Assembly: GCF_001194135.2 (NCBI RefSeq)
Contig: NC_068981.1
Span: 192,414,608-192,478,607, forward strand
Direction: 5' to 3'
Length of the DNA stretch: 64,000 nt
Source: Octopus bimaculoides
Taxonomy: Eukaryota
The notes under the pieces are model-generated. The model was not told the DNA's origin. It did not search any database and was given only the letters and a program-made list of their open reading frames with translations. Every line of letters begins with the position of its first letter. Positions within the stretch are counted from its first letter, which is position 1. Positions 1 to 32,020 of the stretch are shown in pieces. Made by a program: the position numbers and the translations under genes.

Positions 1-1
1 A

Positions 2-208
2 CAATTCCCCCTTCGTGTGACTTTTGCCATGTCCATAAACAAATATCAGGGTCAAACACTGTCTGTAGCTGGTCTTCTCTTGGAAGAGCCCTGCTTCTCA
101 CATGGACAACTGTATGTTGGCTGCTCAAGAGTGGGCAGCAAAAAAAACCTATTTGTATATGCTCCACAAGGGAAAACAAAGAACATTGTTTACAATGAGG
201 TGTTATAG
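2..208 (+). mobile_element. Helitron RepHel helicase (Pif1-like) C-terminal coding remnant
   Basis: Frame 2 reads QFPLRVTFAMSINKYQGQTL...FSHGQLYVGCSRV...KTKNIVYNEVL*, the typical C-terminus of Helitron helicases; truncated by the window edge. Confidence 0.85.
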
Positions 209-390
209 TCACAACAGCAAGAAAGTATGTACATGATCACCTTCTTTTACGAAACTTCATTGACTTTCATATATTTATATTCATATACATATATATACGT
301 GTGTTTGGGTGCGTGTGTGTATATACATCTCTCTATATAAAGATGATGCGTAGTCTAGACAGCGTTTTTAGATTTCCTTATTCTCTTTAA

Positions 391-598
391 CCCGGGCAAC
401 GCCGGATATTTCTGCTAGTATATAATAAACGTGAAGTTGTGTGTATGTGTGAAGCCTTTTTAAAAGTTTATAGAAATCCACTTAGCATAAAGGTTTTTTC
501 GTTGCAACGCTTTCTTTTTTAGTTGATTTGCACCTAGCAAGACTTATTGTAGATGGCGTAATAAGTCACACCCGAACAACGTCGGGTTATGCTGCTAG
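391..598 (+). mobile_element. Two tandem Helitron 3' termini (GC hairpin + CTAG followed by T)
   Basis: CCCGGGCAACGCCGG..CTAG|T (391-418) and CCCGAACAACGTCGGG..CTAG|T (571-598), directly downstream of the helicase ORF. Confidence 0.8.
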
Positions 599-1299
599 TA
601 CATACATAAATAGAAGTTGGATCTTTGAAATGGCATGATGATAGAAGGTGAAAAATATGTTGCCTTGATGATATTTTGAAAGAAGGTTGGTTCGGATCAG
701 TAATGGTGGAGTTAGATGTAAATAGAAGCTCTGGAAACTGAATAGTATGTTAATGTGGAGCTTGAGGGAAGGTGTATGCCACGTGGGGTGAAGGTGTACA
801 ATGATTTATAGGAGTAAGAAATTGGTGAAGACATGTGGAGCAACAGAGGAGTCTGGATAGAATGGAAATGGTTATCATTCAATGGATGAGTAGAATATCA
901 CTGAGAGAAAGAAAGACAAGCAATGAATCAGAGATTCATGGTAGCAATAGAGAAAGTGATGTATGTTGGGAAGAGAAATGGGATAACATGGTTGGGCTAT
1001 TTGCTAAGGAAGAATTAAAATGACTGGATAAAAGGAATGATGAAAATGAATGTAGGAGGAGGTAGAGGAAGGAAAAAAACATAGTTAAAGATGATATAGG
1101 AAGAAATGAGAGCACAAAAGTTAGGAAGGTGGGAGATGTATAAATTAGAATAACTTAGAAAATGCCATTTTTTCTGCTTGAACAGGGAAATGGCATTAAA
1201 ACATTTGTGTTGTAGATTAGTTATCAGTAGCATGACAGTAAAAGTAAAACCTGCATATATGCATCAAAATCAGTACTAATAGATGTACAAAAGGAGTGT

Positions 1300-2270
1300 T
1301 TCTATAAGTTTTTTTTGCAAACCACATCAATATCAAAGGAAAGTAGTCTCATTATCTCTCATTATCCACAATGGCATCTTCCATGTACTTGTTGGACAAT
1401 ACTAAAACATCTGCTCCTGTGTGTATAGAAACTATAGGTATGGTACAAGAAATGAGAGGAAATCAAAGCTTTTGGAGTTCTGTGATACAAACAGCTAAAC
1501 CAATTGCAGCATTAACCAGTCAGTCACCTGACCACTTATCAATTAGATGAATACACGAGCCAGAAAAGACTTGGTAGTCATCAGGAAATGAAATAAATTG
1601 CTGGTTGTGATTATTAAGTCTTTTTATAGAGAAGAAAACACCTCTCAAATGTTTAGTGATTAGTGTTGTCAGAGTAAGAACTAGACAAATGAAAAGGTAT
1701 AAGACTATGGTAACTGAAAGCTCCATCTACTAGATATAGTTTCAGAAAAGCGTCAGGAGGTATATTAAAGAAGAGGAGATAAAGATCCATAACACAGAGC
1801 ACAAATGGGAGTTTGACACAACCTGTTGTATATCATAGACCAAATTTGAGAGTGGAATCAGGACTCTTGCTGGCCAGATAGAAACAATTATTCTCCCAAA
1901 CACTCTTCGTAATGTAGGTTAAAGTAATTGGTCAAAGGATCAATGTATATCATAACAAATTTATTGACAATAAACAAAGGAAGGATTATAAGATGTTAAC
2001 AAATTTTGTGTATAGAGATAGGTCACAAAGACTTATCCACATGGTATACATTTATAATCCTATTAAGAGCCTTTATAATGAGAGCAAAGAAATTGTCCAA
2101 ATGAACAGATACTGTTCTTGAGAAGACCAATACTTGAGAGAAAGCTTGCACTGCCATGTCATTCAATTAGCTTAGGTATGTCAAATATAGAACCCACTGG
2201 CTGAATCTGTTACACAACAATATTTGTCTGGCTCCTGAGCTCAACTTCATAAAACAAATAAGATCTTATT
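1300..2270 (+). mobile_element. Highly degenerate LINE fragment (RTE-like endonuclease region)
   Basis: Broken-frame translation near 1435-1500 resembles GYGTRNE.G..LLEFC..N.L; many stops and frameshifts, boundaries approximate. Confidence 0.4.
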
Positions 2271-3291
2271 CTTATTTTTCAATTTTAAAATATTCGATGA
2301 AATATATATTGCTCACATGGATTCAGTCTAATGATATTGATGATATTCAAAAGTCTTGCAGCTGAAAAAAAAAACACAAGCCTGGTCTTTAGTCTCACCA
2401 GAGTTATATAATTTAGATTGGTCCTTTTTGTCATTGTTCTGTGTGTCAGCATTTGGATGCCAACAGACACCCCACTTTTTCATATATGTGATTGTGGAAT
2501 TGGAGGGGATCTGGGTAAGGTTGGGTGTCTTGGATTTAGTTTTTTTTTTTCAACATCCCTGAAATTCATAAACCAAATGTATTTTCAAACCTCCAGCACA
2601 AAAGAGCCCAAGCTTCTACTCGGTCATATCTAATGATTGTTAAACTAACCTTCCACTCTTGAAATGCTTTTTTACATGAAACCATTTGGCAACATCGATT
2701 GGCTGTTATAAAGCTAAATTTACAATTTTGTATAAATAATATACCATCTCTATTACCTAATATATGAGTGCCTGTCTTTTCTGATTTATGAATACTTTGG
2801 ACACAATGATGATGATGATGATGACACTAAACTACTACTGTCGGTTAAGATGACGAGTGTTCCTGTTGATCTGATCAACAGAACAGCCTGCTCGTGAAAT
2901 TAATGTGCAAGTGGCTGAGCACTCCATAGACACATGTACCCTTAATGTAGTTCTCAGGAAGATTCAGCGTGACATAGATACAGGTACAACTCATTTTTGC
3001 CAGCTGAGTGAACTGGAGCAATGTGAAATAAAGTGTCTTGCACAAAGACACAATGCACCACCAGGAATCGAACCCATGCCATTACAGTTGTGAGCTGAAT
3101 ACCCTAATTACTAAGCCTCGTGCATTCACAGTAGTAGTAGTAGTGTGTGTGTGTGTGTAGATATGTATGTATCTATATCTATGTATTACTTGGAAACAGG
3201 TGAAAGTTGGTGACAGGAAGGGCCTCCAATAGTAGAAAATCTGTCTCATGTAAGCATGGAAAAGTAGACATTAATACAATGATGATATATA

Positions 3292-3406
3292 TATATATAT
3301 CGACTTTAAAGAGAGCTCAAAACTGATCCATTGAAAATACTTTATTATTATAATAAAGTATTTTCAATGGATCAGTTTTGAGCTCTTTTTAAAGTCGATA
3401 TATATA
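3292..3406. repeat. Near-perfect 115-bp palindrome (foldback MITE-like) in (TA)n context
   Basis: Arms 3292-3347 and 3351-3406 pair base for base except one G:T (3311/3387); 3-nt loop TTA. Confidence 0.9.
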
Positions 3407-4339
3407 CAAAAACTCAATTGTGAGTATTTTGCTAAGTTTCTTAACAGATACTATATTTTTGCCTAATTTTTGGTATAAAAAAATATATATAAATACATAT
3501 ATATATATATATATATCATTTCCATGCTTATATGAGGCAGATTTTCTACACTTGGATGCCTTTCCTGTCACCAACCTTCACCTGTTTCCAAGTAAGATAA
3601 TATTTTGGCATGGCTGGACATGTTTTCATTGAAGATTGGAAACAAAGACACCACTTGTATGATGATGACAACTGTCATGCAATGTCAAGGCAAGGAGACA
3701 TAAATACATTCACATGCACATACACACGTGTGTGTATGTGTATATATATATATATATTTTTAATGATGGTTTTGTTGTTTCCATTAACTTGAAAAGCTCT
3801 TCTTCAGAAACAGAGGAAAGTCCAATAGAAAAGGAAGACGGAGGAATAAAAAATTGCCAACGATTCACATGTGGTTACATTTTGAAAAAAAAATTCATAA
3901 CAAATGGACACATTTTTATGTATTCTAATTTTGTTGTAGCAGACCATTTGCATATGTAACTGTAATGCTGTGAAACTACTGGAAATAAAATAACAATGTT
4001 ATTATATTTGCAACAGTACAGTGAGTATTGATTTACTTATGGAAAGTAGTGGCAAACTACACTTGTGTATCATAACTTAATAACATGGTCACTTTATAAT
4101 CCAAATTAATGAAAACAAAAAAGATCATCATTAACGTTCAAGCTTGTATTTTCAAAATTTAATCCTTCTTAAGCCTTGGTCCCAATTTTTTTGGTGTTGG
4201 CTCAGCTAGAAAGGGTGTTGCCCAGGCAACTAGTATAACACCCCTGCATCCACCACTGGGTAGGCCATGTCAGTTCTCAGCTGTTATGCTTAGAGTATAG
4301 TCATGTAGTGTATGCTCAAAGGATTTTAGTTTTTCCCAA

Positions 4340-4800
4340 ATGCTCCAAGCAGAAATATTGCATCAAGTTTTGCCAAAAGCTTGGTGATACTTAAGCTCTA
4401 ACAATCCAGAAGATTCAGCAGGCCTTTGGAAAAGATGCCATGGACAAAACTCAGATCAAAGAGTTGTACAACCACTTCAAACATGACCACACCTCACTGT
4501 AGAGTGAGGCACGCCGTCAACAAGCCAAAATGAGGAACTAATTGACAAAATTGTCATGGAAGACCATCATGTAACAGTCCAGGAAATTGCTCACACAATG
4601 GGAATAAGCACAGGATCAGTGTATTCCATTTTAATAGAGGATTTGTGCATGTGGAGAGTGTCAGTGAAATTCATCTCCAAGGTACTGGTGGAGCAGCAGA
4701 AGCAACTCTGCATGGAAATCGGTCAGGACATGCTGGCCTGTACAAAGCATGACCCAGAGCTCATGAAGACCATCATCACTGGTGATGAGACTTGGGTGTG
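4340..4800 (+). mobile_element. Degenerate mariner (DD34D-type) transposase, N-terminal half
   Basis: QKYCIKFCQKLGDT..., then VTVQEIAHTMGISTGSVYSIL...RVSVKFISKVL...IITGDETWV (HTH plus first catalytic D motif); stops and frameshifts present. Confidence 0.85.
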
Positions 4801-7197
4801 TGGTCTCTGTCTGATGCATCCAAAAGGAAAATCTGATAAATGTGCACCACATGTCAGTACTCTAGGTGTAAGTCAGGAACTGTCATGGCCTACCAGTGCA
4901 AAACGTTTTATACATGCATAGAAATGGTGGCTTCACCTCTCACTCTAAGGATTTTGCCCATGCAGCATTACGACACTTACCAAAGGTACAATGCAGTGGG
5001 ACTGAACCCGAAACCCTGTGGTCGGGGAGCAAACTTCTTAACCACAATAGCTACGTGTGGAAGGATTTTTCTTTCAAACAAATGTATTGAGAACATGACT
5101 GAGTATTATCTTTATCTTTTTTGTAACCAAGCGTTTTTTCTCACTTATTTTTCATATGCTATAAGCTTAGTACTGTAAAATTCCAAATCTATAACCATCT
5201 TCAGAGTGAACGGATGTTGGTAAAGAGTTAAGGTGATTGGTGGAGATATTAATGTCAGAATTTGAATTTTGACCGTTAGAAATGACATGTCATCACTCAT
5301 GGTTACCTATGTTAGTGGCTTAAACATGCGTGTCTTTATTTTGGCATTATACTGTTTTACCAGTATATCAGTATTGCTTCCATTATTAGTACCTATTTCA
5401 GAGGGTAACGTACCAGAGTATGACTATGTTGCTCACTTAGATTAATAACAACAACACATATACATAAACGTATTTACAATTTTTAATATTTTTAGTCGTC
5501 GTTGACGTCATATTAAATTTGATACCGTAAAATGTTTCTCATATCCTTATTTCTTAGGAAAAGAATAGGGACGTGGGTGAAAAAAAGTGTAAGAAAAAAA
5601 AAATATAAGAAAAGAAAGGAAATAGAAATTTTTGTAATTCTTTTTCAGGATCGTAATTTCCGTCTCCTGAAACAAGTGGACACTAAAAAACGAGGGAAAA
5701 CTAGTCTTTCCCATAAGGTATGGGAATATGGACTTCACCGAGTCCGTATTACAAAATTTCACCAACTCTGTATTACAATCATTTTAACGTATCTGATCAA
5801 TCCTAATAATAAATAAATACCGACCAAATTACAGATGTAGCATTTCAAAAATACATAGTTATAACAAAAAAGATGGGTTCCACATGGCACCACACCTTGT
5901 TGAACTAATGTAGTAGACTAAGTGGGAATGTTAATTACTAAAGATTTAATTTTAGGACATGATAAAATATACAGTTCGCGCGTAGGCTCTCTGATCAAAG
6001 GTTTTCAACAGAGTTTTTGAATAGCTGTTCCTCGAAGTACCATACACCAAGGGAAAGGGTGAAAAAACATTCATTTCTCTTATTTTTTCTTTTGTTCAGC
6101 ATTCCTCCTGTGTTTTATACAACAGAAATTACGATTCTGAAAGCTGTTTTCACGAAAATTCCAGTTCTTTTTAACACTCCTCCTTTCGGTGTCCTGTTCC
6201 TTCTAAGTGTGGTAGAGGTGGTTATTCCAAAACTCCGCTGAATTTTCCGCATGATTTTAAAAATATATTGTTATTCCGTTAGTAATGTAATAATTAAAGA
6301 AGAAACTATATTCTAATGTACCTGAACGTTATATATTGTAATGTTTATTGTATATACACACTTATTTTGGATATTAAATGTAGCACATATATTTGGAAGA
6401 ACTCACATACGTCTTAGTCAACTCGACTAATTGGTTCTGTCTTGTCAATGATTGTTTAAGACCAACTCTACATCAAAATACGTAAAATAATTGTTGGAAC
6501 GTATAACCAAAGATATGTTTTGTATGTATAGAACGTATCTGTTTTAACATTCAACTGTAAATAAAGATAAAAATGTTTATTGGCATTTTAATTCGTTAAT
6601 ATTTTCGAATTATATTGATTTATATCAACGAATTTATGTAATTTCGGCCTACTTCATTAAATCGCTGTTTAATATATTTAATGTTACTTGTGGTTAAATA
6701 TAATTATATTTTAAATTTAAAGCTTCTTGCACGATTATTTAGAAATATACACGTGAAAAGAATGCGAATTCAAATCCTGAAAAAAATCATAACTTTTGCA
6801 GCTGACATTAAATTGTGTGAACTTCATTTATTTAATTTGTAACGAAATAAATTTTCCTGTAATTTAAAACACGAAATTGTTCAAATGCGAGAACAATACA
6901 AGATGTCTGTCACCCGACGCCCGCGCACCAACGTATAACTGGGTTTTTAATTTATATAAAAAAACAGCCCAGTTAATTTAATTCGTTTTAATATTAATTT
7001 AGGGGAAAATATCAGAATCCAAAGAAACTCGTCTGTTTTGGATAGATGATATAAAGGTAAAGCTTAGGTTTTGTTAAAGCTTACATGTTTTGTCACATGT
7101 CAAGATAACGAGTTAGAGGTTGACGTGATGAGAGGGAAAAACATTGCAGTCATAAGAGCATCAATATGAACACACCTGCATACAGAATATTTAAGGG

Positions 7198-7239
<42 letters not shown>

Positions 7240-7489
7240 AGTTCAAATGCCTATTTAAAAAAAATAATATTTTAAATTTATAAAACAGCAAGTGTGTCTA
7301 TTGTTCAGCATTTGAGAAAATTTCATATTAATATTTCGTTTTTAATAATATAATTTATTTCGTGAATACTATGTCCTGATATAGCAGCGAAAAATATTCA
7401 CTAGTAAAATACAGATACACACATATATAAATATATATAAAACTTAATATACATGTGTGTGTATTGGGTTATATAAAAGAAACATTAAT

Positions 7490-7670
7490 CCGCCATTTCC
7501 CTGTATTGTTAAGTGGCAAGCTATGAAAATGAGGCAAGACTATGAATATTAATTACGCACGTGATCTCAATAATTAACCATGTGATCTAAAGCGCAAGAT
7601 TCTATTGGCTGTTTACTATTAGCGCGCAAGATATTTTACAGTTTTATGTCGAAAGTGAGGCTGACCGGAA
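7490..7670 (+). promoter_or_regulatory. Putative SRSF2 proximal promoter
   Basis: Locally CpG-rich; YY1-like CCGCCATTT 7490-7498, E-box CACGTG 7558-7563, reverse CCAAT 7604-7608, ETS-like CCGGAA 7665-7670. TSS not determinable. Confidence 0.5.
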
Positions 7671-7814
7671 AGAAAGCCACAGTTTTTGGAAAGCGAAGCG
7701 AGTTAAGGTGACGAGCTACTTTTCTCATTTCTGGGACCGAGAAAATATAAAATATTGCCGGCTTTTTTCTTCCAAGAGAAAGGTACTGCAATTCAAGTGG
7801 TGGATTGGACGAAG

Positions 7815-8708
7815 ATGAGCTACGTACGACGAGGGCCTTCTGAATTAGACTTAGAAGGCATGGTTTCACTAAAAGTGGACAATCTTACTTACAGAACAAC
7901 ACCAGAGGATTTGCGTCGCGCATTTGAGAAATATGGCGACGTAGGAGATGTGTACATACCACGAGACCGCTTTACCAGGGAAAGCCGAGGATTTGCTTTT
8001 GTACGCTATCATGATAAACGAGATGCTGACGATGCAATGGATGCTATGGACGGTGCTATGATGGATGGACGCGAACTACGTGTCCAAATGGCTAGATATG
8101 GTAGACCGGCTGACCCATATCGGAGAGGTCCCCCACCTCGCCGTTTTGGCGGTGGTGGTTATAGCTCCTATCGATCGAGAAGACGATCATATACGAGATC
8201 ACGATCGAGGTCGCGGTCTCGTTCATCACGCCGGCGGCGAAGATCATATTCAAGATCACGAAGTCGCAGTAGAAGTCGTTCCTACAAAAGTAGATCAAGA
8301 TCTCGATCGGCGTCATATTCCAGATCGAGTCGCAGTAAACATTACAGTCGTAGTCCATCTCCATCAAGTAAAGGAAAGAAGCGGAGCAGTGCCAGTAGTC
8401 GAAGAAGCACGAGGAGTCGGAGCGCCAGTCGGGAGAGGAAGAGCCATTCTCGCAGCCGCAGCCCTGTCAGTCCGAGACGGAGTCCAGATCGTTGCAGTGA
8501 AGGTCGCGACGGAAGCGAAAGTGGTGCTGGTGCTAATGCTGGTGGTGGTGGTGGTGGAGGCAGTTCTGGTAGTGTACCACGTGAAAATTCCAAATCCAGA
8601 AGCAGAAGTCGAACCCCTCACAGCCGGAGCTGTTCTCCTGAAGCATTGTCAGACCGTGGTAGCAACAACCATAACAATCTCGAGCAGCAGGTGGAGGAGG
8701 AAGACTGA
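7815..8708 (+). CDS. SRSF2: Serine/arginine-rich splicing factor 2 (SC35), single-exon CDS, 297 aa
   Basis: [18 protein letters not shown]...[52 protein letters not shown] is the SC35-type RRM, followed by [12 protein letters not shown] and a long RS domain; true start taken as ATG 7815 (ORF track starts upstream at a non-ATG codon). Confidence 0.97.
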
Positions 8709-8813
8709 GTGTTTGTAATTTGGAGACAAAAAATCACAACAAAAAGAAAAAAAATAAAGAAAAGAAAAAGAAAATACAACCACAGCAGATGAACACTGAT
8801 ATCTTGGCAGCAG

Positions 8814-11549
8814 GTGAGATGAATGGGTTAAATTTATTGTAGTGGTTGACTGAAAATGATAAAAAAAATTTAAAAAAGCCAAAAAAAAAAAAGGCTTAAA
8901 CAATTTTTTCATTCATCACAAGACACAAGCTGAACAGATATATATAAAAATGAAGTTTTTTTTTTAAAAGAATGAAAAAAAAAAAAAAATCTCCAGCGAA
9001 TGTTAAAACATTTGAAACTGATGGAGGTTTTAAAGATGTTGGCGATGATGCTGAGTGTGAATGGCACCTTTTAAAAACCACTGTATACATTGGTGAGAGT
9101 TGCTGCTGTTGATGCTGTCTGCATGGTGTAGCTGTTCAAATGTAAGACTACTTTCTGATAATGTATTGACTTTTTTTTTTTTTTTTAAAACATTTCCTTT
9201 TTTTTCACTCTTAATTTCCATGGCCATAGCTTTTTATCTATAAAAATGTGTTTGTCTGGAAGTATTTCCTCATTTTCTGCCCCCTCCCATTCTTCATTAT
9301 TATTATTACTACTATTACTACAGTTGGTTTAAAAACCAGTTTAAGATGAAACAAAAATCAACTGATTTCTTTTATAAAATGTCATCATGCCTGGCGATAA
9401 ATTGTATTTTCGTTCTGATAAAAATTATGTGGTTTAGATATTGTCGTCATGCTAGCTTTTTGGCTGGTTTACAAACTTAACTGTTTTTGTATCTTTTCAT
9501 TTTAAAACTCAAGTTAAAACTGACTTGATTGCATTAAAAATTTTTTTTTTTTGCTTAGTTTCTAAATGTTCACCTCATGCAATAAAAACACTTAAAATAA
9601 CTATATAAAAACAATTCCCCTTGTAGTTTTGACTTCTGAAATATATAATGAAAAATATTTCGATCATAATCATTCTAGAAGTTGGTCTCTCTAAATGTAT
9701 TAAATTTTAATAGTTGGGTTGGTTAACTGTAAATTTGTTGTGTTGGGAAACCATATTGAACGTCATTGATTTTTAGTTTCAGCCAGTCTCTGTTGTAGTT
9801 AAAAAAGATATTTGATGATGATGATGGTTTCTATATCTTTTTTTTTCTTTGCTGTCATTATTCCACAAGGAGTAGTGTCGACTACAACATGAACTATGAA
9901 CAAAACCGACATCATCCTTCTACCGCCTCCCTACTAAATTTAAAAAACCCCTCTTCTGTCTAGATTTACTTGAGATGACAATATTTCTGTCTTGTGTTTT
10001 AGGGCGGAGTCAACTCAGACCCGGGGCATGTTCCAGGTTCCTGTTGATTGCTGCCGTTTTGTTGCTGCTTTTTTTGATGCCTCATTGCATCTGCAGTTGG
10101 AAGTGTAACCTCATTTGGTGGTATCAATTTAATATAAGTCTTCAGTTTTTGATTACTAAAAAACCGATTACAGTTTAGAATCGACTAGACAAACTTTGAC
10201 GAGGGTACCCCCTGTCTCTTATTGTCAGACCATCCTTTCTGTTCTCAAGCAGTTTTACTGTAAAGGGACTTTCCATATTTTGGGCTATTTTCAAGAATCC
10301 AACGACATAATTGACAACCCTGCCTCATGCTTCCATCCCCCTCTCCCTCCCCCTCTGCTTCAAATTAGTTCTTGACTTTAGTATACAGTTCTGAGAATGA
10401 TAATGATAATAAATCTGCCAATATACCCTGCTGCCGGTGTGGCCGTCCCTAATTCACCTACCCAGCCTACTTATATCACTGTTATTGTTTTTGCTTATCC
10501 TGTTTCCTAATTTAAATTCCTAAATGTTTCTAAAGCATATTTTTAAATCTAAATTTTAAATTAAATGTTGTAATTTGTAAATGACCTCCGAGTCATAAAT
10601 CTGTTTAACCCTGTGACTAGGGTCAATTTAATATTGTTTCTTTACCAAATTTGTATGCAACTGTGAAGACCGTTAAAATTATTATCATGGGTGGTGTGGT
10701 CTATGCTGCAGGGGTATTTGCTGGTTGGCTGCGGTGCTGTTGTTGGTTGCCGTGTAGCTGGTCTGTAGCTGGTCACTGGCAGTGCTGATGCTGCTGGTCT
10801 TGTAGCAGGTCGGTGAGGAGGAGGAGGAGGAGAGGAGGTGTCTGCTGTTCCTTACACAGCAGCAACTACACAATCTGGCTGCTCTCACTTGCACCAGTCT
10901 CCTGTGTGGCTGCAGAGCTCCCAATTATTGTAATGCTGTTGGGCTGAGATAGCTGTGCCGCTGCTGCTGCTGTGCCGCTGTACCCCGCTCTCAGAATGAT
11001 TTTAAACCCGTGTTGCTGCTGTTGCTTGGGTCAAAACAACCCGTTGCTGTGCTTCAGTCATTTTGATCCTTATTTCATAGGTATGTATTGCAGAATTTCT
11101 TTTTCCCTTCAATGCAGGTCTTTAAAAAAAGGTCACTGGACTGACCTCTCTTACTGAGTGTCAGACCTCTCATTAGCATGCTTTATTTTCTCATATTGTT
11201 AACAACCATTCCTCATGCACTGCAATTTATCTGCGGGTGCTGCTAAACCATGGCATAGGGTTTGTCTCTTTATGAGATGAATTCTGCACAGGTTTGTGTG
11301 CTAAACCTGTTGTTGCTGTTCTGGTTGACCTTGTCAAACGTGTAAAACTAATTTTTGCTGAAATCATCACAAATTACTGCCATCTTGTGGTTTTCTAGTC
11401 AAATAAGATTGTGACAATTTTTGCAACTACAAAATCTGAAATGTAATCTGTAGAAGGCAGATGACATAAAAACAGTTATTTTAACTGTTTAAATATATAT
11501 TAATCTCAACATGTGATGTGGCTGGAAAATGACTGTCTAACAGGTAAGT
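8814..11549 (+). other. Candidate spliced 3' UTR of SRSF2 (donor 8814, acceptors 9963/10002/11117, donors 11081/11544)
   Basis: CAG|GTGAGA at 8813/8814; TACTAAA 9932-9938 plus CCCCTCTTCTGTCTAG| 9963; TGTTTTAG| 10002; TAG|GTATGT 11081; CCCTTCAATGCAG| 11117; CAG|GTAAGT 11544. Usage unproven without RNA data. Confidence 0.5.
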
Positions 11550-14500
11550 CTTGTCCTACCTGATCCTGATGAAGAGAAACAACTGTAGAGTCTGGTTTAC
11601 CATCAACTGTAATTTCTTCATAAAATACATTTTAACATACTGGTGTTTAGTTTTATTTATGCCATTCTAACACTTAAACACCATTAAGGTCATTTTTATT
11701 AACGGCTTTTCATTTTTAACTTTTGTTTATTGCAGTTTAGGGGATTGGTGTTAAAATGAAACGTTTGGGTGCTCTGGAAATTACCTCGAAATTTTGCTGG
11801 AGCTTTAATGTGTATAAACCTTTGCTGCTGGGGCTGTCACTGCTTTTGAAGTTCAATAATCACTGAGGCAGAATGAAAATGAGTTTCTTGCTTCGATTTT
11901 AGGGATTCCAGAACCAATTGTAGTGTTCTTTTTTTTAAAATTTTTTTTTCTTTCCAACTAGATAGTTGTTTTAATTTTTAGGTTTTGTTCCTGGGAGCCT
12001 CTAAATAGCATGACTTGTTTGTAGAATCTCGGAAATACAAGAAGCTTATTCACTGAAATATGGTTTCATAGCAATATTTTTTACATAAACCATTTAGTTA
12101 AATATTTATTAATGTTCTAAATCATTGCATTTGAATTTTAGGTATAATGCAGTGGGAAACGATATTTCAACTAAGCAATTATTATGGTCAGATGCATAGA
12201 ATAGGGGATTGGTTGATATGGAAAATAATGCGTTTGGAGCTATTTTAGGCTGGAAAAATGTTTAAAAAAAAAAAAAATTGCAAAAGTTAATGATGACAAC
12301 ACTGATAACAGATTTGAAGCTTGAATACGTTTGTGTGATGCAGAATAACTTGAAATAGAATTTCCGTTTATACAAATTGAATTTGTGGAATAATATATTC
12401 CTCATTCCATCATTTGCTCTGTGTTATTGTTGCATCCATCTCCCTTCAATTGCAGGATATTTAAAATCAACACAATGTGTGTGTTCATATTTTTGTCAGT
12501 TAAATCCTGCATGCATCCACAAGCGCCTATATTATAAGTGCAAATGAAACACTTACAGATATAACAGCTGAGGTAAACTGCTTCAAATGAGAGGGCTTTA
12601 TATTGTGGATTGCATTTGATGGCATGGCTGGTAGTGTTACGTGCAATCACTGCAGCAATTATGCCAGAGTTGTAAAGAAGTGATGATGTCAGTGTGACAT
12701 ATAATGGTACTATAAAAATTGGTTTATTGTGTGTGGTTACTTCTATTTTTTTCTTTTGTTACTGTTGTTACCACCATTACCTTTGTATCTTATATTGATA
12801 CTGTTTACAATCTGAAATAAACTTTATGGTAACCTGACAAAACATTGAAAAATTAGTTTTCATGAAGGATGCACTGTTATAAGAATAATACTTCAGGAAT
12901 TAATGTGAAGGTAAAATATGATCCAAGGTTCCATGTAAGTATGAAAGGAGAGGATGCTGTGCAGGCTGCAACAGTTGATAACTTTTGTGTCTTAGAGTCT
13001 ACAATAAAAAAAGAGCATTCAGTAGCTTTGAAATAGAAATCAGCCATCTGAAATCCAGAATTTTTTTTTTAATTTTCCCTTTTCTGAAACTTACAGAAAG
13101 GAGTCCTGTAAACAATATGTTAAATCATTTAACTATAGATGAAGAGCACGGGTTTTCTTGAAATCAGACAGACATATTTGAACATGATGTATTAAGTATG
13201 GTTTCTGGGGAAGAAGAATTTGATGTTTGGATAAGTACATTAGTTGGGTTTTTTTTTAAATTTTTTTTTTTACTTAAATGTAACCAGTGAGGCTGTGATT
13301 TATGGTGAAGGTAATGTAACAGCTTTTTTCAGTTTAACCAGCTGTGGACTACTGTAAAACCTTGCTGATATGGAGGTGAGCAACCTTTTACTCAAATCTT
13401 CCTTGGTTTCTGTAATTATATTTTCACTTTATCCAGTCACTTAATTCCACTTGCACCATTACCATAATCACTTTTGGATTACATCTTGGGTTTGGCTGGT
13501 TTTACATAAACTTTGATTTAACTTTAGTGATTGCTGTACCAACGAAAATGCTATTGTCCAGTAATGCCTAATGCTGAAAGCTTTTTGCAACCACACAGCC
13601 TGTCTATTACAACTTCTGCAGATAGTGAGAATGATCTTTTGAGAAATTGGAATCAAAGTTACACCTCTGGTTAGAGTGGATAGTTGCATAATTTGGAAGT
13701 AAAATCTGTTTCAGACAGATTGTATCAAAATAGTATAAAAGCGGAGTTTCAAGTTTACCAATGGGAGCATATTGACAGATTTTGTTTTTGAAGCCCTGAC
13801 TTCACTACATATGAGACAACCATACATTGCCACATGTGAGGGTATACTGTGCCAGAAGAAAAGCCACAAAGATATACTCCAACAAAGAATCATTGCCAAT
13901 TCTGGTTTACTTCAAGGTAAATACGTTTTTGTGTGGTTCATCAAGAGAAGGGAAGTTAATTTTTGAGTCACTAATAAATTGGTATTTTGCAAACTTGTGT
14001 TGCTTTATTTATTTCAGTCTATTTTTGCAAATCACTTACTTTTTAAAAAGTTTTTGTGGTACAATGTAGTAGAAAATGTATTTCTTTAGCAAATTTTTTG
14101 CTTTTAAGGTTTAGAAAGGTACTGTATGTCTCTAGCATGGATTTATATATAATTAGGTGTCTAGCCTATTGTGGTGCTTGGAGACGGAGATAAACTATTC
14201 CTGGATTGTTGAGGCAGCAGCTGCAGATGACAAATGGAGTTGATGTCCTTGTGAGAAGGGCTGATAGGAAATGGAAGGATTTGTGACCTGGTTGATCCAA
14301 TTCCATAAGTGTTCTGAATTGTCCAGCTACTTTTAGTTTTGATTTGGTATTCACTAGAGATTGTCTGTTTCGGGTTGTGCTCAGCTCAAATGCAATCTAG
14401 ATATTTGCAATGCTAGGTCCATGGTCAGAGAAGAGCAGCAGACTATGTACACATAAAGTAATCATCGTCTTGTACTTTGTGTTTTCCAATGCATGGGTTT

Positions 14501-17873: not shown

Positions 17874-20018
17874 TCAAGAGGAGATGCCACTATGAAAGAT
17901 TGCTCAATAAAGACAATGAATGGGAGAAAAAGAGTCTGCTGAATGTTGACCCAACAGAGGGACCAGCTATCCGAGTTGACAGTAGATAATGCAATTAAGA
18001 GTATGAAAACAAGGAAAGTCCCCAGCCCGTCAGGAATCACTTTAGAGATGTTCAAAATATGTGGCAGTGTCGGCTATAGCCTAGTCACCCGTATTATTAA
18101 CCAGGTGATTACACGAAGGGGTCATACCCAATGACTGGTGTAGCAGCACCATAGTCAACTGCTACAAAGGTAACGGTGACTCTTTAGATACAAATAATTA
18201 CAGAGGTATCAAGCTGTTAGATCAGGTAATGAAATTCATGGAGAGGGTCATAGCCTAACTAATTAGGGAGCGAATCAATTTAGATGAGATGCAGTTTGGG
18301 TTCGTGCCAGGTAAAAGCACCACTGATGCCATATTTCTAGTAAGACAGTTGCAGGAGAAATACCTAGCCAAGGATAAACCTCTGTACCTGGCTTTCGTTG
18401 ATATGGAGAAAGCCTTTGACAGGGTCCCCCGATCCCTTATCTGGTGGTCAATGAGGAAACTTGGGATAGAAGAATGGTTAGTGAGAGCTGTGCGAGCCAT
18501 GTACAGAGAAGCTGTCAGTAAGGTGAGGGTTAGCAATGANNNNNNNNNNNNNNNNNNNNNNNNNNNNNNNNNNNNNNNNNNNNNNNNNNNNNNNNNNNNN
18601 NNNNNNNNNNNNNNNNNNNNNNNNNNNNNNNNNNNNNNNNNNNNNNNNNNNNNNNNNNNNNNNNNNNNNNNNNNNNNNNNNNNNNNNNNNNNNNNNNNNN
18701 NNNNNNNNNNNNNNNNNNNNNNNNNNNNNNNNNNNNNNNNNNNNNNNNNNNNNNNNNNNNNNNNNNNNNNNNNNNNNNNNNNNNNNNNNNNNNNNNNNNN
18801 NNNNNNNNNNNNNNNNNNNNNNNNNNNNNNNNNNNNNNNNNNNNNNNNNNNNNNNNNNNNNNNNNNNNNNNNNNNNNNNNNNNNNNNNNNNNNNNNNNNN
18901 NNNNNNNNNNNNNNNNNNNNNNNNNNNNNNNNNNNNNNNNTTCCAGGCAGAAAAACTAGACGTAGTTGATAGCTTCCGCTATCTAGGTGACCAAGTTAGT
19001 TGTGGGGGAGGGTGCACTGAAAGTGTAGCTGCTAGAATAAGAATAGCCTGGGCAAAGTTCAGAGAGCTCTTACCTCTGCTGGTGACAAAGGGTCTCTCTC
19101 TCAGAGTAAAAGGCAGACTGTATGAACAGCCATGCTACATGGCAGTGAAACATGGGCCATAACTGCTGAGGACATGCGTAAGAGCGCAAGGAATGAAGCC
19201 AGTATGCTCCGATGGATGTGTAATGTCAGTGTGCATACTCGACAGAGTGTAAGTACCTTGAGAGAAAAGTTGAAGCATCAGTTGTGGTGTGCAAGAGAGT
19301 CGATTGAGCTGGTATGGTCATGTAGCGAGAATGGATGAGGATAGCTGTGTGAAAAGTGCCACACCCTAGCGGTTGAGGGAACCTGTGGAAGAGGCAGGCC
19401 CAGGAAGAACTGGGATGAGATGGTGAAGCCACGACCTCCGAACATTAGGCGTCACCGAGACAATGACTTCTGACCGAGACCTTTGGAAATATGCAGTATG
19501 TGAGAAGACGCGGCAAGCCAAGTGAGATCAAAATCCAAGGCCTCTGCCAGGGATGTAGCCAGCCCAGTTATGCGTACCTTTCCTCCATTGGACACTAAAA
19601 CCCTGCTTGCAAAGACCTGTTGAGACAAGTGAAATTGAAATCGAACTAAATTCAACGATTGGCCCCCATGCCAACGTCTCCTCCATTGGACACTAAACTC
19701 TGCTTGCGAAGACTTGTTGGGGCAAGCGAAAGAGATTGTTGCCAGTGCTGCTGGACTGGCTCCTGTGCAGGTGGCACGTAAAATACACCATTTTGAGCGT
19801 GGCCATTGACAATATCACCTGACTGGCCTTCGTGCCAGTGGTATGTAAAAGCACCCACTACACTTTGGAGTGGTTGGCGTTAGGAAGGGCATCCAGCTGC
19901 AGAAACTCTGCCAAATCAGATTGGAGCCTGGTGTAGCCATTTGGTTTCACCAGTCCTCAGTCAAATCGTCCAACCCATGCTAGCATGGAAAGCGGACGTT
20001 AAACAATGATGATGATGA
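17874..20018 (+). mobile_element. 5'-truncated RTE-clade LINE (RT domain, 3' UTR, (GAT)n tail), interrupted by N gap
   Basis: QFGFVPGKSTTDAIFLVRQLQEKY...AFVDMEKAFDRVPR...; after the gap FRYLGD...RIRIAWAKFRELLPLL..., MLHGSETW; continues into family A sequence and ends in GATGATGATG at 20006-20018. Confidence 0.92.
18540..18940. other. Assembly gap (N run)
   Basis: Run of n; smaller gaps at 31217-31226, 56536-56545 and 61904-61920. Confidence 1.
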
Positions 20019-29759: not shown

Positions 29760-30660
29760 ATGAGATGAAAACTGGTGTATTTTGTAACTTACAAAAGACA
29801 AAGACAGGTGGTGTAGAAAACAAACGGATGTATTAGTATAATGCTCAGGAAGTGAAAAAGTCTTTAACGTTTCGAGCCTATGCTCTTTGACAGAAAGAAA
29901 CAAGGAGAGAAAAAAAATGTGTAGTGGCTAGCGATCTATCATGGCGAAAGTCGGACAGAAGGGTCACATAGGAGAGCTAAGAAGGGGAGATAATAAAGTG
30001 GTAGTGATCCCAAGACGAAGGTGCGTGTGTGTGTAAGAGAGTTCGTATGTGCGTGTGAAAGAGGGCTGGTGATCTTGACGTGTACGTATGTGTAGGTGTG
30101 AAAATGTGGGGATGGGAATTGGTCAGTGCTGGTGTGTGCATGGTCGTGTGATGTGAAGTGTTGTGTGGTATGGTGTAGTGTGGTGTGGTGTGATGGTGTT
30201 GGGAGGTGGGGAAAGCACGTGTGGGGTGTGGGTTAGGTTGAGGGTGGAGGTAGAGGTGGGGTATGTGGGTAGGCAGAGGGTGTAAGGGATAGGATGGGAA
30301 GGATAAGGAAGATGGGATAGGAATGTGTAGGAGTGGGGTGGGCTTATAAGGGAGGGTTGATGATGAAGGGGAAGGGGAAGGTGGGTATGAGAGAAGAGAG
30401 GAGAAAGATAGTAGGGGTGCTAAGAAGTAGGAGTCGGAGCAAGAGAGAAGTGGATGGGAGGAAGTACGAGGGAGGAGGAGGTTAGATGAAGAGGGGAAGA
30501 GAGTTGAGCCCATGTGGCGCAAAGGAGCGATTTTTCCCTTGTTAACAATTAACATGGAAAGAATAGATAAATAGTTACCAGGGAAGTAAAAAGTTGTAAC
30601 TCCTTGTTTTTTATTACGTGAAATATTTTGTATAAAATACATAAATATAGTTAAGAATAT
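29760..30660 (-). mobile_element. Possible second Penelope-like 3' end in opposite orientation
   Basis: Minus strand carries a degenerate hammerhead-like CTGTCAAA-GAGC-ATAG-GCTC-GAAACGTTA (29860-29900) after a pyrimidine-rich tract; no clear ORF. Confidence 0.35.
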
Positions 30661-30669
30661 TTCATTTAG

Positions 30670-32020
30670 ATTGTCCAAGTTATCTGCTAATGTCGACATT
30701 TTCAGTGATAAGGCTGAATTTTATAACTCTGCCTTACTTAAAGCAGGCTATACAGAGAAAGTTACCTACCTTAATTCCATTCAATCTCATTCTACCTTTA
30801 CTAATGGAGATATGAAATCTAGTTGTAAGGATATAAATGATATCAATTTTAATTTATACGCCAACACCAAACAGAGGAAGGGAGATAACTCTTATTCCCC
30901 ATTTTTGTTCTAAAGGTAAATCTATGTCTTTCAAAGATAGTTACACTAAAAATAAGGTAACTAATAGTAAAACAATTTGGTTAATTATTCCTTATGGGAG
31001 GCAAATTAAATCTAATCTGCCTTTGCAGTTTCGTGATGCTATTATTAGGAATTTTCCAAAGAATTCTAGGTATTATTCTATTATCAACTCACACACGATT
31101 AGGATTGGTTTTTCTAACACAAAAAATCTCTTACAAATTATCTCTTCACATAATATTAAACTATTAAATATTGATACATTTACTAATACTAACATTAATG
31201 TAGCTAATACCCCCCCNNNNNNNNNNTAGAAACATTAGTAACAAGGTTATTGTATCTGAAGTCAATTACAACAGAATCAAGTTTATGTCAAGTAACTCTA
31301 AAATTAAAAATTCTATATACCAGTGTAAAATTACTTCTGGTAATGAAGTATTTTTTTTTATATTGGAGGCACATCTCAGTTATCTAGAAGAATTTCTAAT
31401 CATTACTCTACATTTAGGGATATGAATAAATGTAACAGTACAGGACTTATTAAATTAATTTGGTATCTAAAAGACCACAATAAACAATTTAATTTAGATT
31501 GGTTGATTCTCTTAATCTCCATACCTTACGACAAAGGCAAGGAATTCTGTCTTCTCTGTAACTCTGAAGTATTTATTATTCTTTTTTCTAAAAATTCCCT
31601 TGTAAATACAGTTACAGAGCATTATATATAATTTAAACATTAAATTTCTTCTTACATTTCACATTCACTAAATATATCTTTTTCCAAGTCTATATGGTTT
31701 TATTTAATATACATATAGTTATATACTTCTCATTTATTTGGTTTCTTCTTTCTTTTACCCCTCCTCTTTCTACAGGCTACCTTTAACGTTATATCATCTA
31801 ACGTTTTTTTTAAACAAACTTAATAGCGTTCAGTTAATCACTATACATATCCATCATTTTCTGTTAAAATGTCTTATTGATGAGTTTCATTTCTTCATTT
31901 CCCTGAAGAGAAGATTTCATTGTTTTACACCATTTTATTCCTTTGGAATAATACCAGTGATATCTTCGAAACATGTCAGAAGTAAAAGAATTTGAATAAC
32001 ACCTGCGTTTAACTCCATTT
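30670..32020 (+). mobile_element. Penelope-like retroelement remnant (RT C-terminus, GIY-YIG endonuclease, terminal repeat) in CEP76 intron 2
   Basis: SKLSAN..IF..KAEFYNSALLKAGY; TIWLIIPYG..IKSNL...FPKNSRYYSIINSHTIRIGFS.TKNLLQIISSHN; YIGGTS...NHYSTFR..NKCNSTGLIKLIWYLKD...W....PYDKG...CLLCNSE: Penelope-type motifs. Confidence 0.8.
31895..31985 (+). ncRNA. Minimal type-I hammerhead ribozyme fold (Penelope-associated)
   Basis: CTGAAGA 31903-31909; stem II GAAGAT 31910-15 / ATCTTC 31962-67; GAAA 31968-71; palindromic stem III A-CATG-T; GTC cleavage triplet ending 31977; stem I TTCC vs AGAA with one mismatch at the first pair. Confidence 0.7.

What the first reader, a model, noticed from the sequence alone, without database searches (positions are those of the whole stretch)
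8709..10130. SRSF2 3' UTR intron architecture predicted to trigger NMD
Seen: a near-consensus donor CAG|GTGAGA 105 nt after the stop codon; a textbook acceptor (TACTAAA branch-like 9932-9938, CCCCTCTTCTGTCTAG| 9963); a second acceptor 39 nt further (10002); AATAAA at 9581 lies between donor and acceptors. Established: mammalian SRSF2 autoregulates by splicing 3' UTR introns, placing a junction more than 50-55 nt downstream of the stop and destabilising the mRNA. Inference: the same logic operates in this invertebrate, with proximal polyadenylation near 9581 competing against splicing. Sequence homology to the vertebrate UTR is not evident by eye, so it could be ancient or convergent.
Basis: partly seen in the sequence, partly recalled or inferred. 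Interest (0 to 1): 0.7.

Follow-up and report, generated by a model that had tools for sequence, protein, structure and literature searches.

The report
Octopus SRSF2 3' UTR intron
The octopus gene for splicing factor SRSF2 very probably has an intron just after its stop codon, the counterpart of the one mammals use for self-limiting mRNA decay, and related animals show this intron is very old, although no octopus transcript could be checked.

Summary
The window is Octopus bimaculoides chromosome CM046601.1. The gene is an SRSF2 orthologue with one uninterrupted 297-aa CDS (7815-8708).

The donor CAG|GTGAGA (GT at 8814) is more than chance. Only 8 GT sites in 128 kb score as well. It also lies 105 nt after the stop, inside the +81 to +146 interval where all seven other lophotrochozoan SRSF2 genes examined have an AG|GT.

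In Owenia, Pecten and Lottia that site is the identical 12-mer AAAGGTTACTAT. Vertebrates have AAAAG|GTTATT. Downstream lies an acceptor, YAG|G(C/A)GCAGT, followed by a GCAGT/GCTGT-rich exon. This matches the experimentally studied SC35 terminal 3' splice site (nhmmer, vertebrate to annelid, E=1.5e-3). The module therefore looks ancient rather than convergent.

In octopus the 3' end of the intron is unresolved: 10002, 11117, 10711 and 9963 are all candidates. No sequence-level homology to the conserved acceptor could be shown. The AATAAA at 9581 occurs at chance density.

No transcript evidence was obtainable, and NMD coupling and autoregulation remain inferences. A new point is that octopus has lost the coding intron, so this may be the gene's only intron, now with a near-consensus donor.

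The parts
7815..8708 (+). SRSF2 coding sequence: 297 aa in a single uninterrupted exon, stop TGA at 8706-8708. It has an N-terminal RRM, a long RS domain and an acidic C-terminal tail.
   Evidence: The ORF was read. Pfam RRM_1 matches aa 20-89 at E=1.3e-22. The best homologues are named SRSF2 and are 78-89% identical over the RRM. The NCBI gene call of 297 residues has exactly this range in GCA_001194135.2. The orthologues checked by tblastn (Pecten, Aplysia, Lottia, vertebrate L009) have an intron after about aa 115 that is absent here.
8709..8813 (+). Proximal 3' UTR segment (105 nt) between the stop codon and the predicted 5' splice site. It is A-rich and contains an AATAAA at 8753-8758.
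8811..8819 (+). Predicted 5' splice site CAG|GTGAGA (GT at 8814-8815).
   Evidence: PWM score 11.7 bits, with only 8 sites as good in 128 kb. It is the only AGGT in the first 300 nt after the stop, and it falls in the +81 to +146 interval shared by 8 of 8 lophotrochozoan SRSF2 genes.
9031..9146 (+). Minor GCTGT/TGCTG-rich island A inside the predicted intron (for example GTTGCTGCTGTTGATGCTGTCTGC). Weak donor-like sites lie at 9093 and 9142.
   Evidence: 5-mer score z of about 2.7-3; TGCNGYY hits at 9101, 9104 and 9113; donors listed.
9581..9586 (+). It is a possible intronic poly(A) signal but is not distinguishable from chance.
   Evidence: the window-wide density is 1.38 per kb per strand.
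9932..9963 (+). Candidate 3' splice site 1: branch-like TACTAAA (9932-9938), CCCCTCTTCTGTCTAG|A, AG at 9962-9963.
   Evidence: Sequence. The generic acceptor score is 4.7 bits and 451 sites in 128 kb are as good. No enhancer-like composition follows directly.
9985..10100 (+). Candidate 3' splice site 2 (TTTCTGTCTTGTGTTTTAG|GGCGGAGT, AG at 10001-10002) followed by enhancer-like island B (10003-10100: CCTGTTGATTGCTGCCGTTTTGTTGCTGC...TCTGCAGTTGG).
   Evidence: Acceptor score 9.0 bits, 84 sites as good in 128 kb. Island z=2.5. TGCNGYY at 10049, 10052, 10063 and 10092. By eye TAG|GGCGGAGT resembles the conserved TAG|GCGCAGT, and the regex hits once in 8 kb, but this was not significant by nhmmer or PWM.
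10647..11067 (+). Major enhancer-like island C. It is G/T-rich (52% GC) and dense in GCTGT, TGCTG, GTTGC and GCAGT. A weak candidate acceptor, TCTATGCTGCAG|GGGTATTTGCTGG (AG at 10710-10711), lies inside the island, about 65 nt from its 5' edge.
   Evidence: It is the highest-scoring region of the whole 64 kb on either strand with 5-mers trained on the terminal exons of 7 other species (z up to 5.4). In 5 of 7 leave-one-out tests and in held-out Babylonia, such a peak starts within 20 nt of the acceptor. Caveat: 38 of 300 dinucleotide shuffles score as high, so the signal is mostly composition. The generic acceptor score at 10711 is low.
11098..11117 (+). Candidate 3' splice site 4: TTTCTTTTTCCCTTCAATGCAG|G, AG at 11116-11117. 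It is the strongest acceptor in the region.
   Evidence: 12.8 bits, only 14 sites as good in 128 kb.

Best explanation
The feature is the 3' UTR intron of the Octopus bimaculoides SRSF2 gene.

Shown:
- The gene is an SRSF2 orthologue whose coding sequence is a single exon.
- 105 nt after the stop there is a near-consensus 5' splice site, at the position where every other lophotrochozoan SRSF2 gene examined has an AG|GT.
- In annelid, bivalve and gastropod genes that site is followed, 240-1330 nt downstream, by an acceptor YAG|G(A/C)GCAGT and a GCAGT/GCTGT-rich exon. These match the vertebrate SC35 terminal 3' splice site and its SC35-dependent enhancer.

Inferred:
- Octopus pre-mRNA is spliced from 8813 to an acceptor at 10003 and/or 11118 (9964 and 10712 are also possible).
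- SRSF2 protein binds the GCUGU/UGCUG-rich islands (10003-10100 and 10650-11070) and promotes this splicing.
- The resulting exon junction, more than 55 nt downstream of the stop, marks the mRNA for nonsense-mediated decay.
- The unspliced mRNA, or one polyadenylated before or within the intron, is the productive form.

The result would be negative feedback on SRSF2 level, as in mammals.

Because the octopus has lost the coding intron, this would be the only intron of the gene. One explanation for that loss is recombination with a cDNA of the intron-retaining productive mRNA.
For: - Identity: RRM_1 at E=1.3e-22; homologues named SRSF2; locus in GCA_001194135.2.
- Donor strength: 11.7 bits, 8 equal-or-better sites in 128 kb.
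- Positional conservation: AG|GT at +81 to +146 in 8 of 8 lophotrochozoan genes. It is the only AGGT in the first 300 nt in 7 of them. The product of shuffle probabilities is 9e-6.
- Identical AAAGGTTACTAT in Owenia, Pecten and Lottia at +82 to +124, and AAAAG|GTTATT in two vertebrates.
- Conserved acceptor TAG|GCGCAGT in Owenia and vertebrates, and TAG|GAGCAGT in Pecten and Aplysia.
- nhmmer, vertebrate profile to Owenia: E=1.5e-3.
- The vertebrate acceptor is the experimentally studied one. GTTGCAGT lies at exon nt 51-58 of L009, matching the ESE mapped to nt 44-60 by Dreumont et al. 2010 (PMC2831310).
- The enhancer-like composition peak marks the acceptor within 20 nt in 5 of 7 leave-one-out tests and in held-out Babylonia.
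- In octopus the top such peak of the 64 kb lies in this UTR on the sense strand. TGCNGYY occurs 23 times in 9001-12000, against about 0.7 per kb elsewhere.
- The mammalian mechanism is documented in PMC2831310 and PMC7726792.
Against: - There is no transcript evidence. Exact-protein look-ups found only the genome record.
- Octopus sequence downstream of the donor shows no significant similarity to any orthologue by blastn, nhmmer or an anchored acceptor PWM.
- The enhancer-like island score is largely explained by dinucleotide composition.
- The ancestral donor is weak (3.4-3.7 bits), as expected for a regulated retained intron. The octopus donor is near consensus, which fits constitutive splicing better.
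- EJC-triggered NMD is not established outside vertebrates and plants for most lineages, and I found no mollusc data.
- For Drosophila SC35, no poison isoform was seen without a decay inhibitor (PMC7726792).
- There is no stable RNA structure like the mammalian enhancer stem-loop.
Confidence: 0.5

Rival explanations
1. The intron is real but constitutive and is not an NMD switch. After the coding intron was lost, the 3' UTR intron became the gene's only intron. Its donor was strengthened so that the mRNA still benefits from splicing-dependent export and expression. Cephalopod NMD either ignores 3' UTR junctions or is evaded.
For: The octopus coding sequence has no intron, whereas every orthologue checked has one. 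The octopus donor scores 11.7 bits against 3.4-8.0 bits in the other species. The strong acceptor at 11117 would make an efficient intron. From my own knowledge, NMD in Drosophila and C. elegans is largely EJC-independent.
Against: A junction 105 nt after the stop is the classic NMD-eliciting geometry. The orthologous intron in mammals is regulatory (PMC2831310, PMC7726792). Dense UGCUG/GCUGU islands are retained on the sense strand.
Confidence: 0.2
2. There is no splicing in octopus. The motifs are relics or chance matches in AT-rich 3' flanking DNA, and the mRNA ends at a proximal poly(A) site (for example the signals at 8753 or 9581), leaving an intronless gene.
For: AATAAA lies at 8753, 45 nt after the stop and upstream of the donor, and at 9581. 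Acceptor-like sites of the quality of 9963 and 10711 are common. No sequence homology to the conserved acceptor/enhancer exon could be detected. The island score is mostly composition. An intronless CDS could also indicate a retrocopy-like history.
Against: A donor this strong within a 70-nt interval is expected about 0.004 times by chance (0.06 per kb per strand). Position is conserved in 8 of 8 genes. The largest G/T-rich, GCUGU-type island of 64 kb lies just downstream on the sense strand.
Confidence: 0.15
3. Splicing of the 3' UTR intron regulates the gene through poly(A)-site choice or nuclear retention, as in TDP-43 autoregulation, rather than through EJC-dependent NMD.
For: Several AATAAA/ATTAAA hexamers lie inside the candidate intron: 9533, 9581, 9699, 10408 and 10560. 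The mammalian SC35 3' UTR is both alternatively spliced and alternatively polyadenylated (PMC2831310, Fig. 1 legend). TDP-43 uses this logic (PMC3950720, listed).
Against: The hexamers occur at chance density. There is no positive evidence for any particular cleavage site.
Confidence: 0.1

Closest known systems
Mammalian SRSF2 (SC35) autoregulation by 3' UTR splicing coupled to NMD (Sureau et al. 2001; Dreumont et al. 2010, PMC2831310; Neumann et al. 2020, PMC7726792)
   Same: - It is the orthologous protein.
- The intron lies in the 3' UTR with a junction more than 55 nt after the stop.
- The downstream region is rich in GCUGU/GCAGU/UGCUG motifs like the SC35-dependent ESE (core GUUGCAGU).
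- In other protostomes the donor (AAAG|GUUAYU) and acceptor (YAG|GCGCAGU) match the vertebrate terminal intron.
   Different: - In octopus the donor is 105 nt after the stop, not about 1.2-4.5 kb as in the two vertebrate loci read here.
- No cassette 'exon 3' was identified in octopus.
- The octopus donor is near consensus instead of weak.
- The coding intron is absent.
- No sequence-level homology of the octopus acceptor or enhancer, and no enhancer stem-loop, could be shown.
- Splicing, SRSF2 dependence and NMD sensitivity are untested.
SRSF1 3' UTR intron AS-NMD (Sun et al. 2010; Ni et al. 2007), as tabulated in PMC7764535
   Same: An SR protein gene in which removal of a normally retained 3' UTR intron makes the normal stop look premature.
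   Different: It is a different paralogue with unrelated UTR sequence. From my own knowledge, SRSF1 regulation also includes translational and nuclear-retention layers.
SRSF5 unproductive splicing conserved across animals and fungi (Lareau and Brenner 2015, PMC4379411)
   Same: It is a precedent for very deep conservation of an NMD-coupled splicing event in an SR gene.
   Different: It is a poison exon or alternative site inside the coding region, not a 3' UTR intron. That study covered SRSF4/5/6 and does not mention SRSF2 in its text.
TDP-43 3' UTR intron 7 autoregulation (PMC3950720)
   Same: [quoted passage not shown]
   Different: It is an unrelated protein and sequence, and its mechanism is not primarily EJC-NMD.

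Membership tests
SRSF2 / SC35 orthologue (protein) | Single N-terminal RRM with the SRSF2-type sequence, followed by an RS domain | tested here: met
   RRM_1 matches aa 20-89 at E=1.3e-22. The top 120 homologues are almost all named SRSF2/SC35 and are 76-89% identical over the RRM. The RS repeats and acidic tail can be read.
SRSF2 / SC35 orthologue (locus) | Head-to-head MFSD11-like neighbour, as seen in Pecten, Aplysia, Lottia and catshark | tested here: inconclusive
   The neighbours are listed. tblastx finds none in the 7.8 kb (10 kb with L001) upstream of the octopus gene or anywhere else in the window. Octopus intergenic distances may simply be larger.
SRSF2-type 3' UTR AS-NMD autoregulatory module | Splice donor in the 3' UTR placing an exon junction more than 50-55 nt downstream of the stop | tested here: met
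   CAG|GTGAGA gives a junction at stop+105. The score is 11.7 bits and the position is conserved in 8 of 8 lophotrochozoan genes. This holds at sequence level only.
SRSF2-type 3' UTR AS-NMD autoregulatory module | The intron is actually removed in some transcripts | not testable with these tools
   Exact-protein look-ups returned only the genome record, or nothing. No RNA-seq access was available.
SRSF2-type 3' UTR AS-NMD autoregulatory module | Sequence homology to the conserved terminal intron (donor AAAG|GTTAYT; acceptor YAG|G(C/A)GCAGT) | tested here: not met
   The feature is met for Owenia, Pecten, Aplysia and, for the donor only, Lottia. For octopus, the donor sequence differs, and nhmmer, blastn-short and an anchored PWM do not single out any acceptor. 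Only the donor position and the downstream composition are shared.
SRSF2-type 3' UTR AS-NMD autoregulatory module | SRSF2-responsive enhancer sequences in the exon downstream of the regulated 3' splice site | tested here: inconclusive
   The top-scoring enhancer-like island of the 64 kb lies at 10647-11067, with a smaller one at 10003-10100. TGCNGYY is enriched. However, 38 of 300 dinucleotide shuffles score as high. Binding was not tested.
SRSF2-type 3' UTR AS-NMD autoregulatory module | Spliced isoform degraded by NMD, with splicing increased by SRSF2 protein | not testable with these tools
   This needs NMD inhibition and over-expression experiments. No mollusc NMD/EJC literature was found.

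The most novel reading that the evidence does not exclude
The SRSF2 'terminal' 3' UTR intron is a single regulatory module inherited from the protostome-deuterostome ancestor. It would consist of a deliberately weak donor AAAG|GUUAYU, an acceptor YAG|G(C/A)GCAGU, and an array of GCAGU/GCUGU enhancers. That would make it one of the oldest conserved non-coding splicing switches. In octopus the constitutive coding intron was erased, plausibly by recombination with a cDNA of the intron-retaining productive mRNA. The regulatory intron was left as the gene's only intron and then acquired a near-consensus donor, so control moved to the 3' splice site or to poly(A) site choice.
Probability: 0.3. Interest if true: 0.7.

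Novelty: new member of a known kind. Interest (0 to 1): 0.55.

Why it matters
SR-protein homeostasis through unproductive splicing is a well-known case of ultraconserved non-coding sequence. For most SR genes, however, the events are thought to have arisen independently, and mostly within vertebrates. If the SRSF2 3' UTR intron is shared by vertebrates, annelids and molluscs, the SC35 feedback loop would date to the bilaterian ancestor. That would provide a short, alignable set of ancient cis-elements for mechanistic work: a weak donor, an acceptor and an enhancer array. The octopus gene is a natural variant, with its coding intron lost and its donor strengthened. It can therefore test whether 3' UTR junctions trigger NMD in a lophotrochozoan, a question on which I found no data.

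Tried and rejected
1. Transcript evidence. Exact look-up of the SRSF2 protein found only the genome record. Look-up of the longest sense ATG ORF in the UTR (9975-10178) found nothing. The cluster look-up also found nothing.
2. Cephalopod orthologues. The full-length search returned none, and a search with the non-RS C-terminal 82 aa returned no hits. No within-cephalopod conservation test was therefore possible.
3. Nucleotide similarity of the octopus 3' flank to Pecten, Aplysia and Lottia (blastn, word size 7), and to the terminal exons of seven species (blastn-short). Nothing significant was found.
4. nhmmer with a vertebrate terminal-exon profile and with a 7-species profile. Owenia was detected (E=1.5e-3) but octopus was not. 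The MAFFT alignment used for the second profile was poor.
5. An anchored, ungapped acceptor PWM built from 8 species. The octopus candidates rank 122 to 1357 of 7349 AG sites, which is not informative.
6. My by-eye colinear matches of octopus 10001-10110 to the vertebrate exon (TAGGGCGGAGT, CCTGTTGATTGCT, GATGCCT). I treat these as possibly chance, because no unbiased search recovers them.
7. The enhancer 5-mer score as motif evidence. It is downgraded to compositional evidence, because dinucleotide shuffles keep most of the score.
8. An RNA stem-loop like the mammalian enhancer. The z-scores are -1.3 and +1.6, so there is no signal.
9. Synteny with MFSD11 or METTL23. Nothing was detectable in the window.
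10. Retrocopy at a new locus. This can be neither confirmed nor excluded. The intact 3' UTR donor at the ancestral position, and promoter-like sequence upstream, argue for the original locus with intron loss.
11. The catshark protein P0014 ends in a different C-terminus with a GTAAGT about 20 nt after its stop. It was used only for the conserved distal module.
Full report
**Locus and gene.** The window is Octopus bimaculoides assembly GCA_001194135.2, chromosome CM046601.1, around 192.42 Mb. An uninterrupted ORF at 7815-8708 on the + strand encodes 297 aa. It has an RRM (Pfam RRM_1, aa 20-89, E=1.3e-22) followed by a long RS domain and an acidic tail. Its best homologues are almost all named SRSF2/SC35 and are 76-89% identical over the RRM. 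The public gene call covers exactly this range, so the coding sequence has no intron. Pecten, Aplysia, Lottia and a vertebrate contig all have a coding intron after about residue 115. The Pinctada, Babylonia and Owenia gene ranges also exceed their CDS lengths. The octopus has therefore lost the coding intron.

**Check of the observation.**
- TGA at 8706-8708.
- CAG|GTGAGA with GT at 8814-8815, giving a junction 105 nt after the stop.
- TACTAAA at 9932-9938.
- An AG at 9962-9963, another at 10001-10002 and a third at 11116-11117.
- AATAAA at 9581-9586.

I scored the sites with a textbook donor matrix whose frequencies I set from memory.
- The 8814 site scores 11.7 bits. Only 8 GT sites in 128 kb (both strands) are as good.
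- With a generic acceptor score, 11117 is strong (14 as good) and 10002 is moderate (84 as good).
- 9963 is ordinary (451 as good), so 'textbook' overstates it.
- AATAAA occurs at 1.38 per kb per strand across the window. There are six between 8709 and 14000, including one at 8753, upstream of the donor. The 9581 hexamer therefore carries no statistical weight.

**Comparative evidence for the donor.** I fetched SRSF2 loci from Pecten maximus (L002), Aplysia (L003), Lottia (L004, two tandem paralogues), Pinctada (L006), Babylonia (L007), the annelid Owenia (L008), catshark (L005) and an amniote-type vertebrate contig from a Logan run (L009). In the first 300 nt after the stop, each lophotrochozoan gene has a single AGGT, except Aplysia, which has two. 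The positions are:

| Gene | AG\|GT junction (nt after stop) |
|---|---|
| Octopus | +105 |
| Pecten | +124 |
| Lottia 1 | +117 |
| Lottia 2 | +146 |
| Pinctada | +83 |
| Babylonia | +89 |
| Aplysia | +81 |
| Owenia | +85 |

- Dinucleotide shuffles give a probability of 0.13-0.36 per gene for an AGGT in +56 to +150. The product over all eight genes is 9e-6. I chose the interval after seeing the data, so this is a rough figure.
- In Owenia, Pecten and Lottia the site is the identical 12-mer AAAGGTTACTAT.
- The two vertebrates have AAAAG|GTTATT, 1.2 kb and 4.5 kb after the stop. In both it lies colinear with a conserved intronic block.
- These ancestral donors are weak (3.4-3.7 bits), whereas the octopus donor is near consensus.

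**Comparative evidence for the acceptor and downstream exon.** A shared-k-mer scan turned up TAGGCGCAGT in Owenia (+702), the vertebrate contig (+1721) and catshark (+4827). It also found TGCAGTGCAG and TGTGTAGCAGT in the same three species.
- In vertebrates the sequence is cactag|GCGCAGTTGTGTAGCAG..., with GTTGCAGT at exon nt 51-58.
- That is the SC35 terminal 3' splice site and the enhancer that Dreumont et al. mapped to nt 44-60, with core GUUGCAGU (PMC2831310).
- Owenia has gtgctttag|GCGCAGTAAGGTG, followed by about a dozen GCAGT/GCTGTG units.
- Pecten has gtgctgtag|GAGCAGTAAGGTG and Aplysia has ttgtag|GAGCAGTAAATG.
- Lottia, Pinctada and Babylonia have related acceptors followed by GCTGT/GCAGT-rich sequence.
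- An nhmmer profile built from the two vertebrates finds the Owenia element at E=1.5e-3, and its tandem duplicates at similar E-values.

The predicted protostome introns are 238-1327 nt long. The vertebrate SC35 terminal intron therefore has recognisable counterparts in an annelid and in molluscs. This favours common ancestry over convergence. The acceptor in vertebrates is experimentally established. The vertebrate donor assignment, and all the protostome junctions, are inferences from sequence.

**Where octopus fits.** I trained 5-mer log-odds on the 200 nt after the acceptors of the seven non-octopus species, then scored the octopus window.
- The highest-scoring region of the entire 64 kb on either strand is 10647-11067 on the + strand (z up to 5.4).
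- Smaller peaks lie at 10000-10100 (z 2.5) and 9031-9146 (z about 2.7).
- TGCNGYY occurs 23 times in 9001-12000 on the sense strand, against about 0.7 per kb elsewhere.

The method has some validation. In 5 of 7 leave-one-out tests the best window starts within 20 nt of the acceptor. In Babylonia, which was not in the training set, the best window starts at stop+1418, next to actgtag|GAGGGGTAAT at +1416. There are important caveats.
- Dinucleotide shuffles of 10650-11070 keep most of the score (38 of 300 reach the observed value), so this is a compositional resemblance rather than a motif match.
- blastn, nhmmer and an anchored acceptor matrix do not single out any octopus acceptor.

The 3' end of the octopus intron is therefore unresolved. 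The candidates are:
- 10002: moderate score, followed directly by island B, and TAG|GGCGGAGT resembles TAG|GCGCAGT by eye.
- 11117: the strongest acceptor.
- 10711: a weak site about 65 nt inside the 5' edge of the major island, where TCTATGCTGCAG|GGGTATTTGCTG resembles Owenia TCTATGTGCTTTAG|G and its GGGGTATTTCCTG units.
- 9963: an ordinary score.

Pinctada shows a two-block arrangement: an enhancer-like block at the acceptor, a gap, then a larger repeated block. This resembles octopus islands B and C if 10002 is the acceptor used.

**Mechanism.** The best-supported reading is that 8814 is a genuine 5' splice site of a 3' UTR intron orthologous to the SRSF2 terminal intron. The further steps are inferred by analogy with mammals (PMC2831310, PMC7726792): SRSF2 binding to the UGCUG/GCUGU islands, activation of splicing, an exon junction 105 nt after the stop, and NMD of the spliced mRNA. 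None of these steps could be tested here.
- Loss of the coding intron means the productive mRNA may be entirely unspliced.
- That loss is what recombination with a cDNA of the intron-retaining productive mRNA would produce. This is a hypothesis, not a result.
- The near-consensus donor is the main discordant fact. It fits an intron that has become constitutive, perhaps to keep splicing-dependent expression for an otherwise intronless gene.
- In that case, regulation would have to lie in the acceptor or in poly(A) site choice, or NMD would not be involved at all.
- I found no literature on EJC-dependent NMD in molluscs.
- For Drosophila SC35, no poison isoform was seen without a decay inhibitor (PMC7726792).

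**Comparison with what is known, and novelty.** The mammalian SC35 feedback loop is well established, so the octopus case is a new member of a known kind. Lareau and Brenner (PMC4379411) showed deep conservation for SRSF5, but they studied only SRSF4/5/6. My literature searches found no report of the SRSF2 3' UTR intron being conserved in protostomes. The library is incomplete, so absence there is weak evidence of novelty.

**Verdict.**
The donor and the antiquity of the module are well supported by comparative sequence evidence. The acceptor assignment, the poly(A) competition, SRSF2 dependence and NMD coupling in octopus remain untested.

Noticed in passing
window 7815-8708: The octopus SRSF2 coding sequence has no intron. 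Pecten, Aplysia, Lottia and a vertebrate have one after about aa 115. The protein is also about 100 aa longer than its orthologues, because of extra RS repeats and a Gly-rich stretch ahead of the conserved acidic tail.
   Followed up: partly
L008 (Owenia) stop+85 and stop+704 to +1000; second copy at stop+7780 and +8730 to +9000: Owenia has SRSF2-type 3' UTR modules in tandem duplicate. Each has the AAAAGGTTACTATT donor and a TAG|GCGCAGT acceptor, followed by roughly a dozen GCAGTAAGGTGTTTGCTGTGCAGT-like repeat units. A further RRM gene lies upstream on the opposite strand.
   Followed up: partly
L006 (Pinctada) stop+821 to +960 and stop+1237 to +1600: There are two enhancer-like blocks. The second consists of about four tandem copies of a unit of roughly 100 nt (…GCAGATAGGTGGCAGTGCTGTATTGCAGCAATG…).
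   Followed up: no
L002, L003, L004, L005 upstream of SRSF2; window 1-7800: An MFS_1/UNC-93 (MFSD11-like) gene lies head-to-head with SRSF2 in Pecten, Aplysia, Lottia and catshark. Catshark also has a Methyltransf_16 (METTL23-like) gene downstream, as I recall for human. Neither neighbour is detectable anywhere in the octopus window by tblastx.
   Followed up: partly
window 8753-8758: An AATAAA lies 45 nt after the stop and 55 nt upstream of the donor, in an A-rich tract. If it is used, it would give a very short 3' UTR that bypasses the intron altogether. The A-runs at 8870-8893 and 8975-8990 could also cause internal-priming artefacts in oligo-dT libraries.
   Followed up: no
window 7600-7760: By eye there is an inverted CCAAT (ATTGG at about 7605) and a TATAAAA-like element (about 7746), 60-210 nt upstream of the ATG. 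This suggests a short 5' UTR and a promoter directly upstream. The promoter scan was not run.
   Followed up: no
window 18289-19162: A reverse-transcriptase fragment (Pfam RVT_1, E=5.5e-8) is interrupted by an assembly gap (a run of N). It is probably a retrotransposon remnant about 9.5 kb downstream of SRSF2.
   Followed up: partly
window 30009-30300 (+); ORF 29977-30699 (-): This is the second-best G/T-rich region by the enhancer 5-mer score. It has high GC skew and a low-complexity His/Thr/Pro-rich reverse-strand ORF. It looks like simple-repeat DNA rather than a gene.
   Followed up: no
window 7203-7238: A (TA)n microsatellite of about 18 units lies about 580 nt upstream of the SRSF2 start codon.
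   Followed up: no
L005 (catshark) stop+1 to +30: The annotated catshark SRSF2-like protein ends in a non-canonical C-terminus, with a GTAAGT about 20 nt after its stop. This suggests that the gene model reads into an intron or reflects an alternative isoform. The vertebrate contig L009 likewise has ATG|GTAATG 7 nt after its stop.
   Followed up: no
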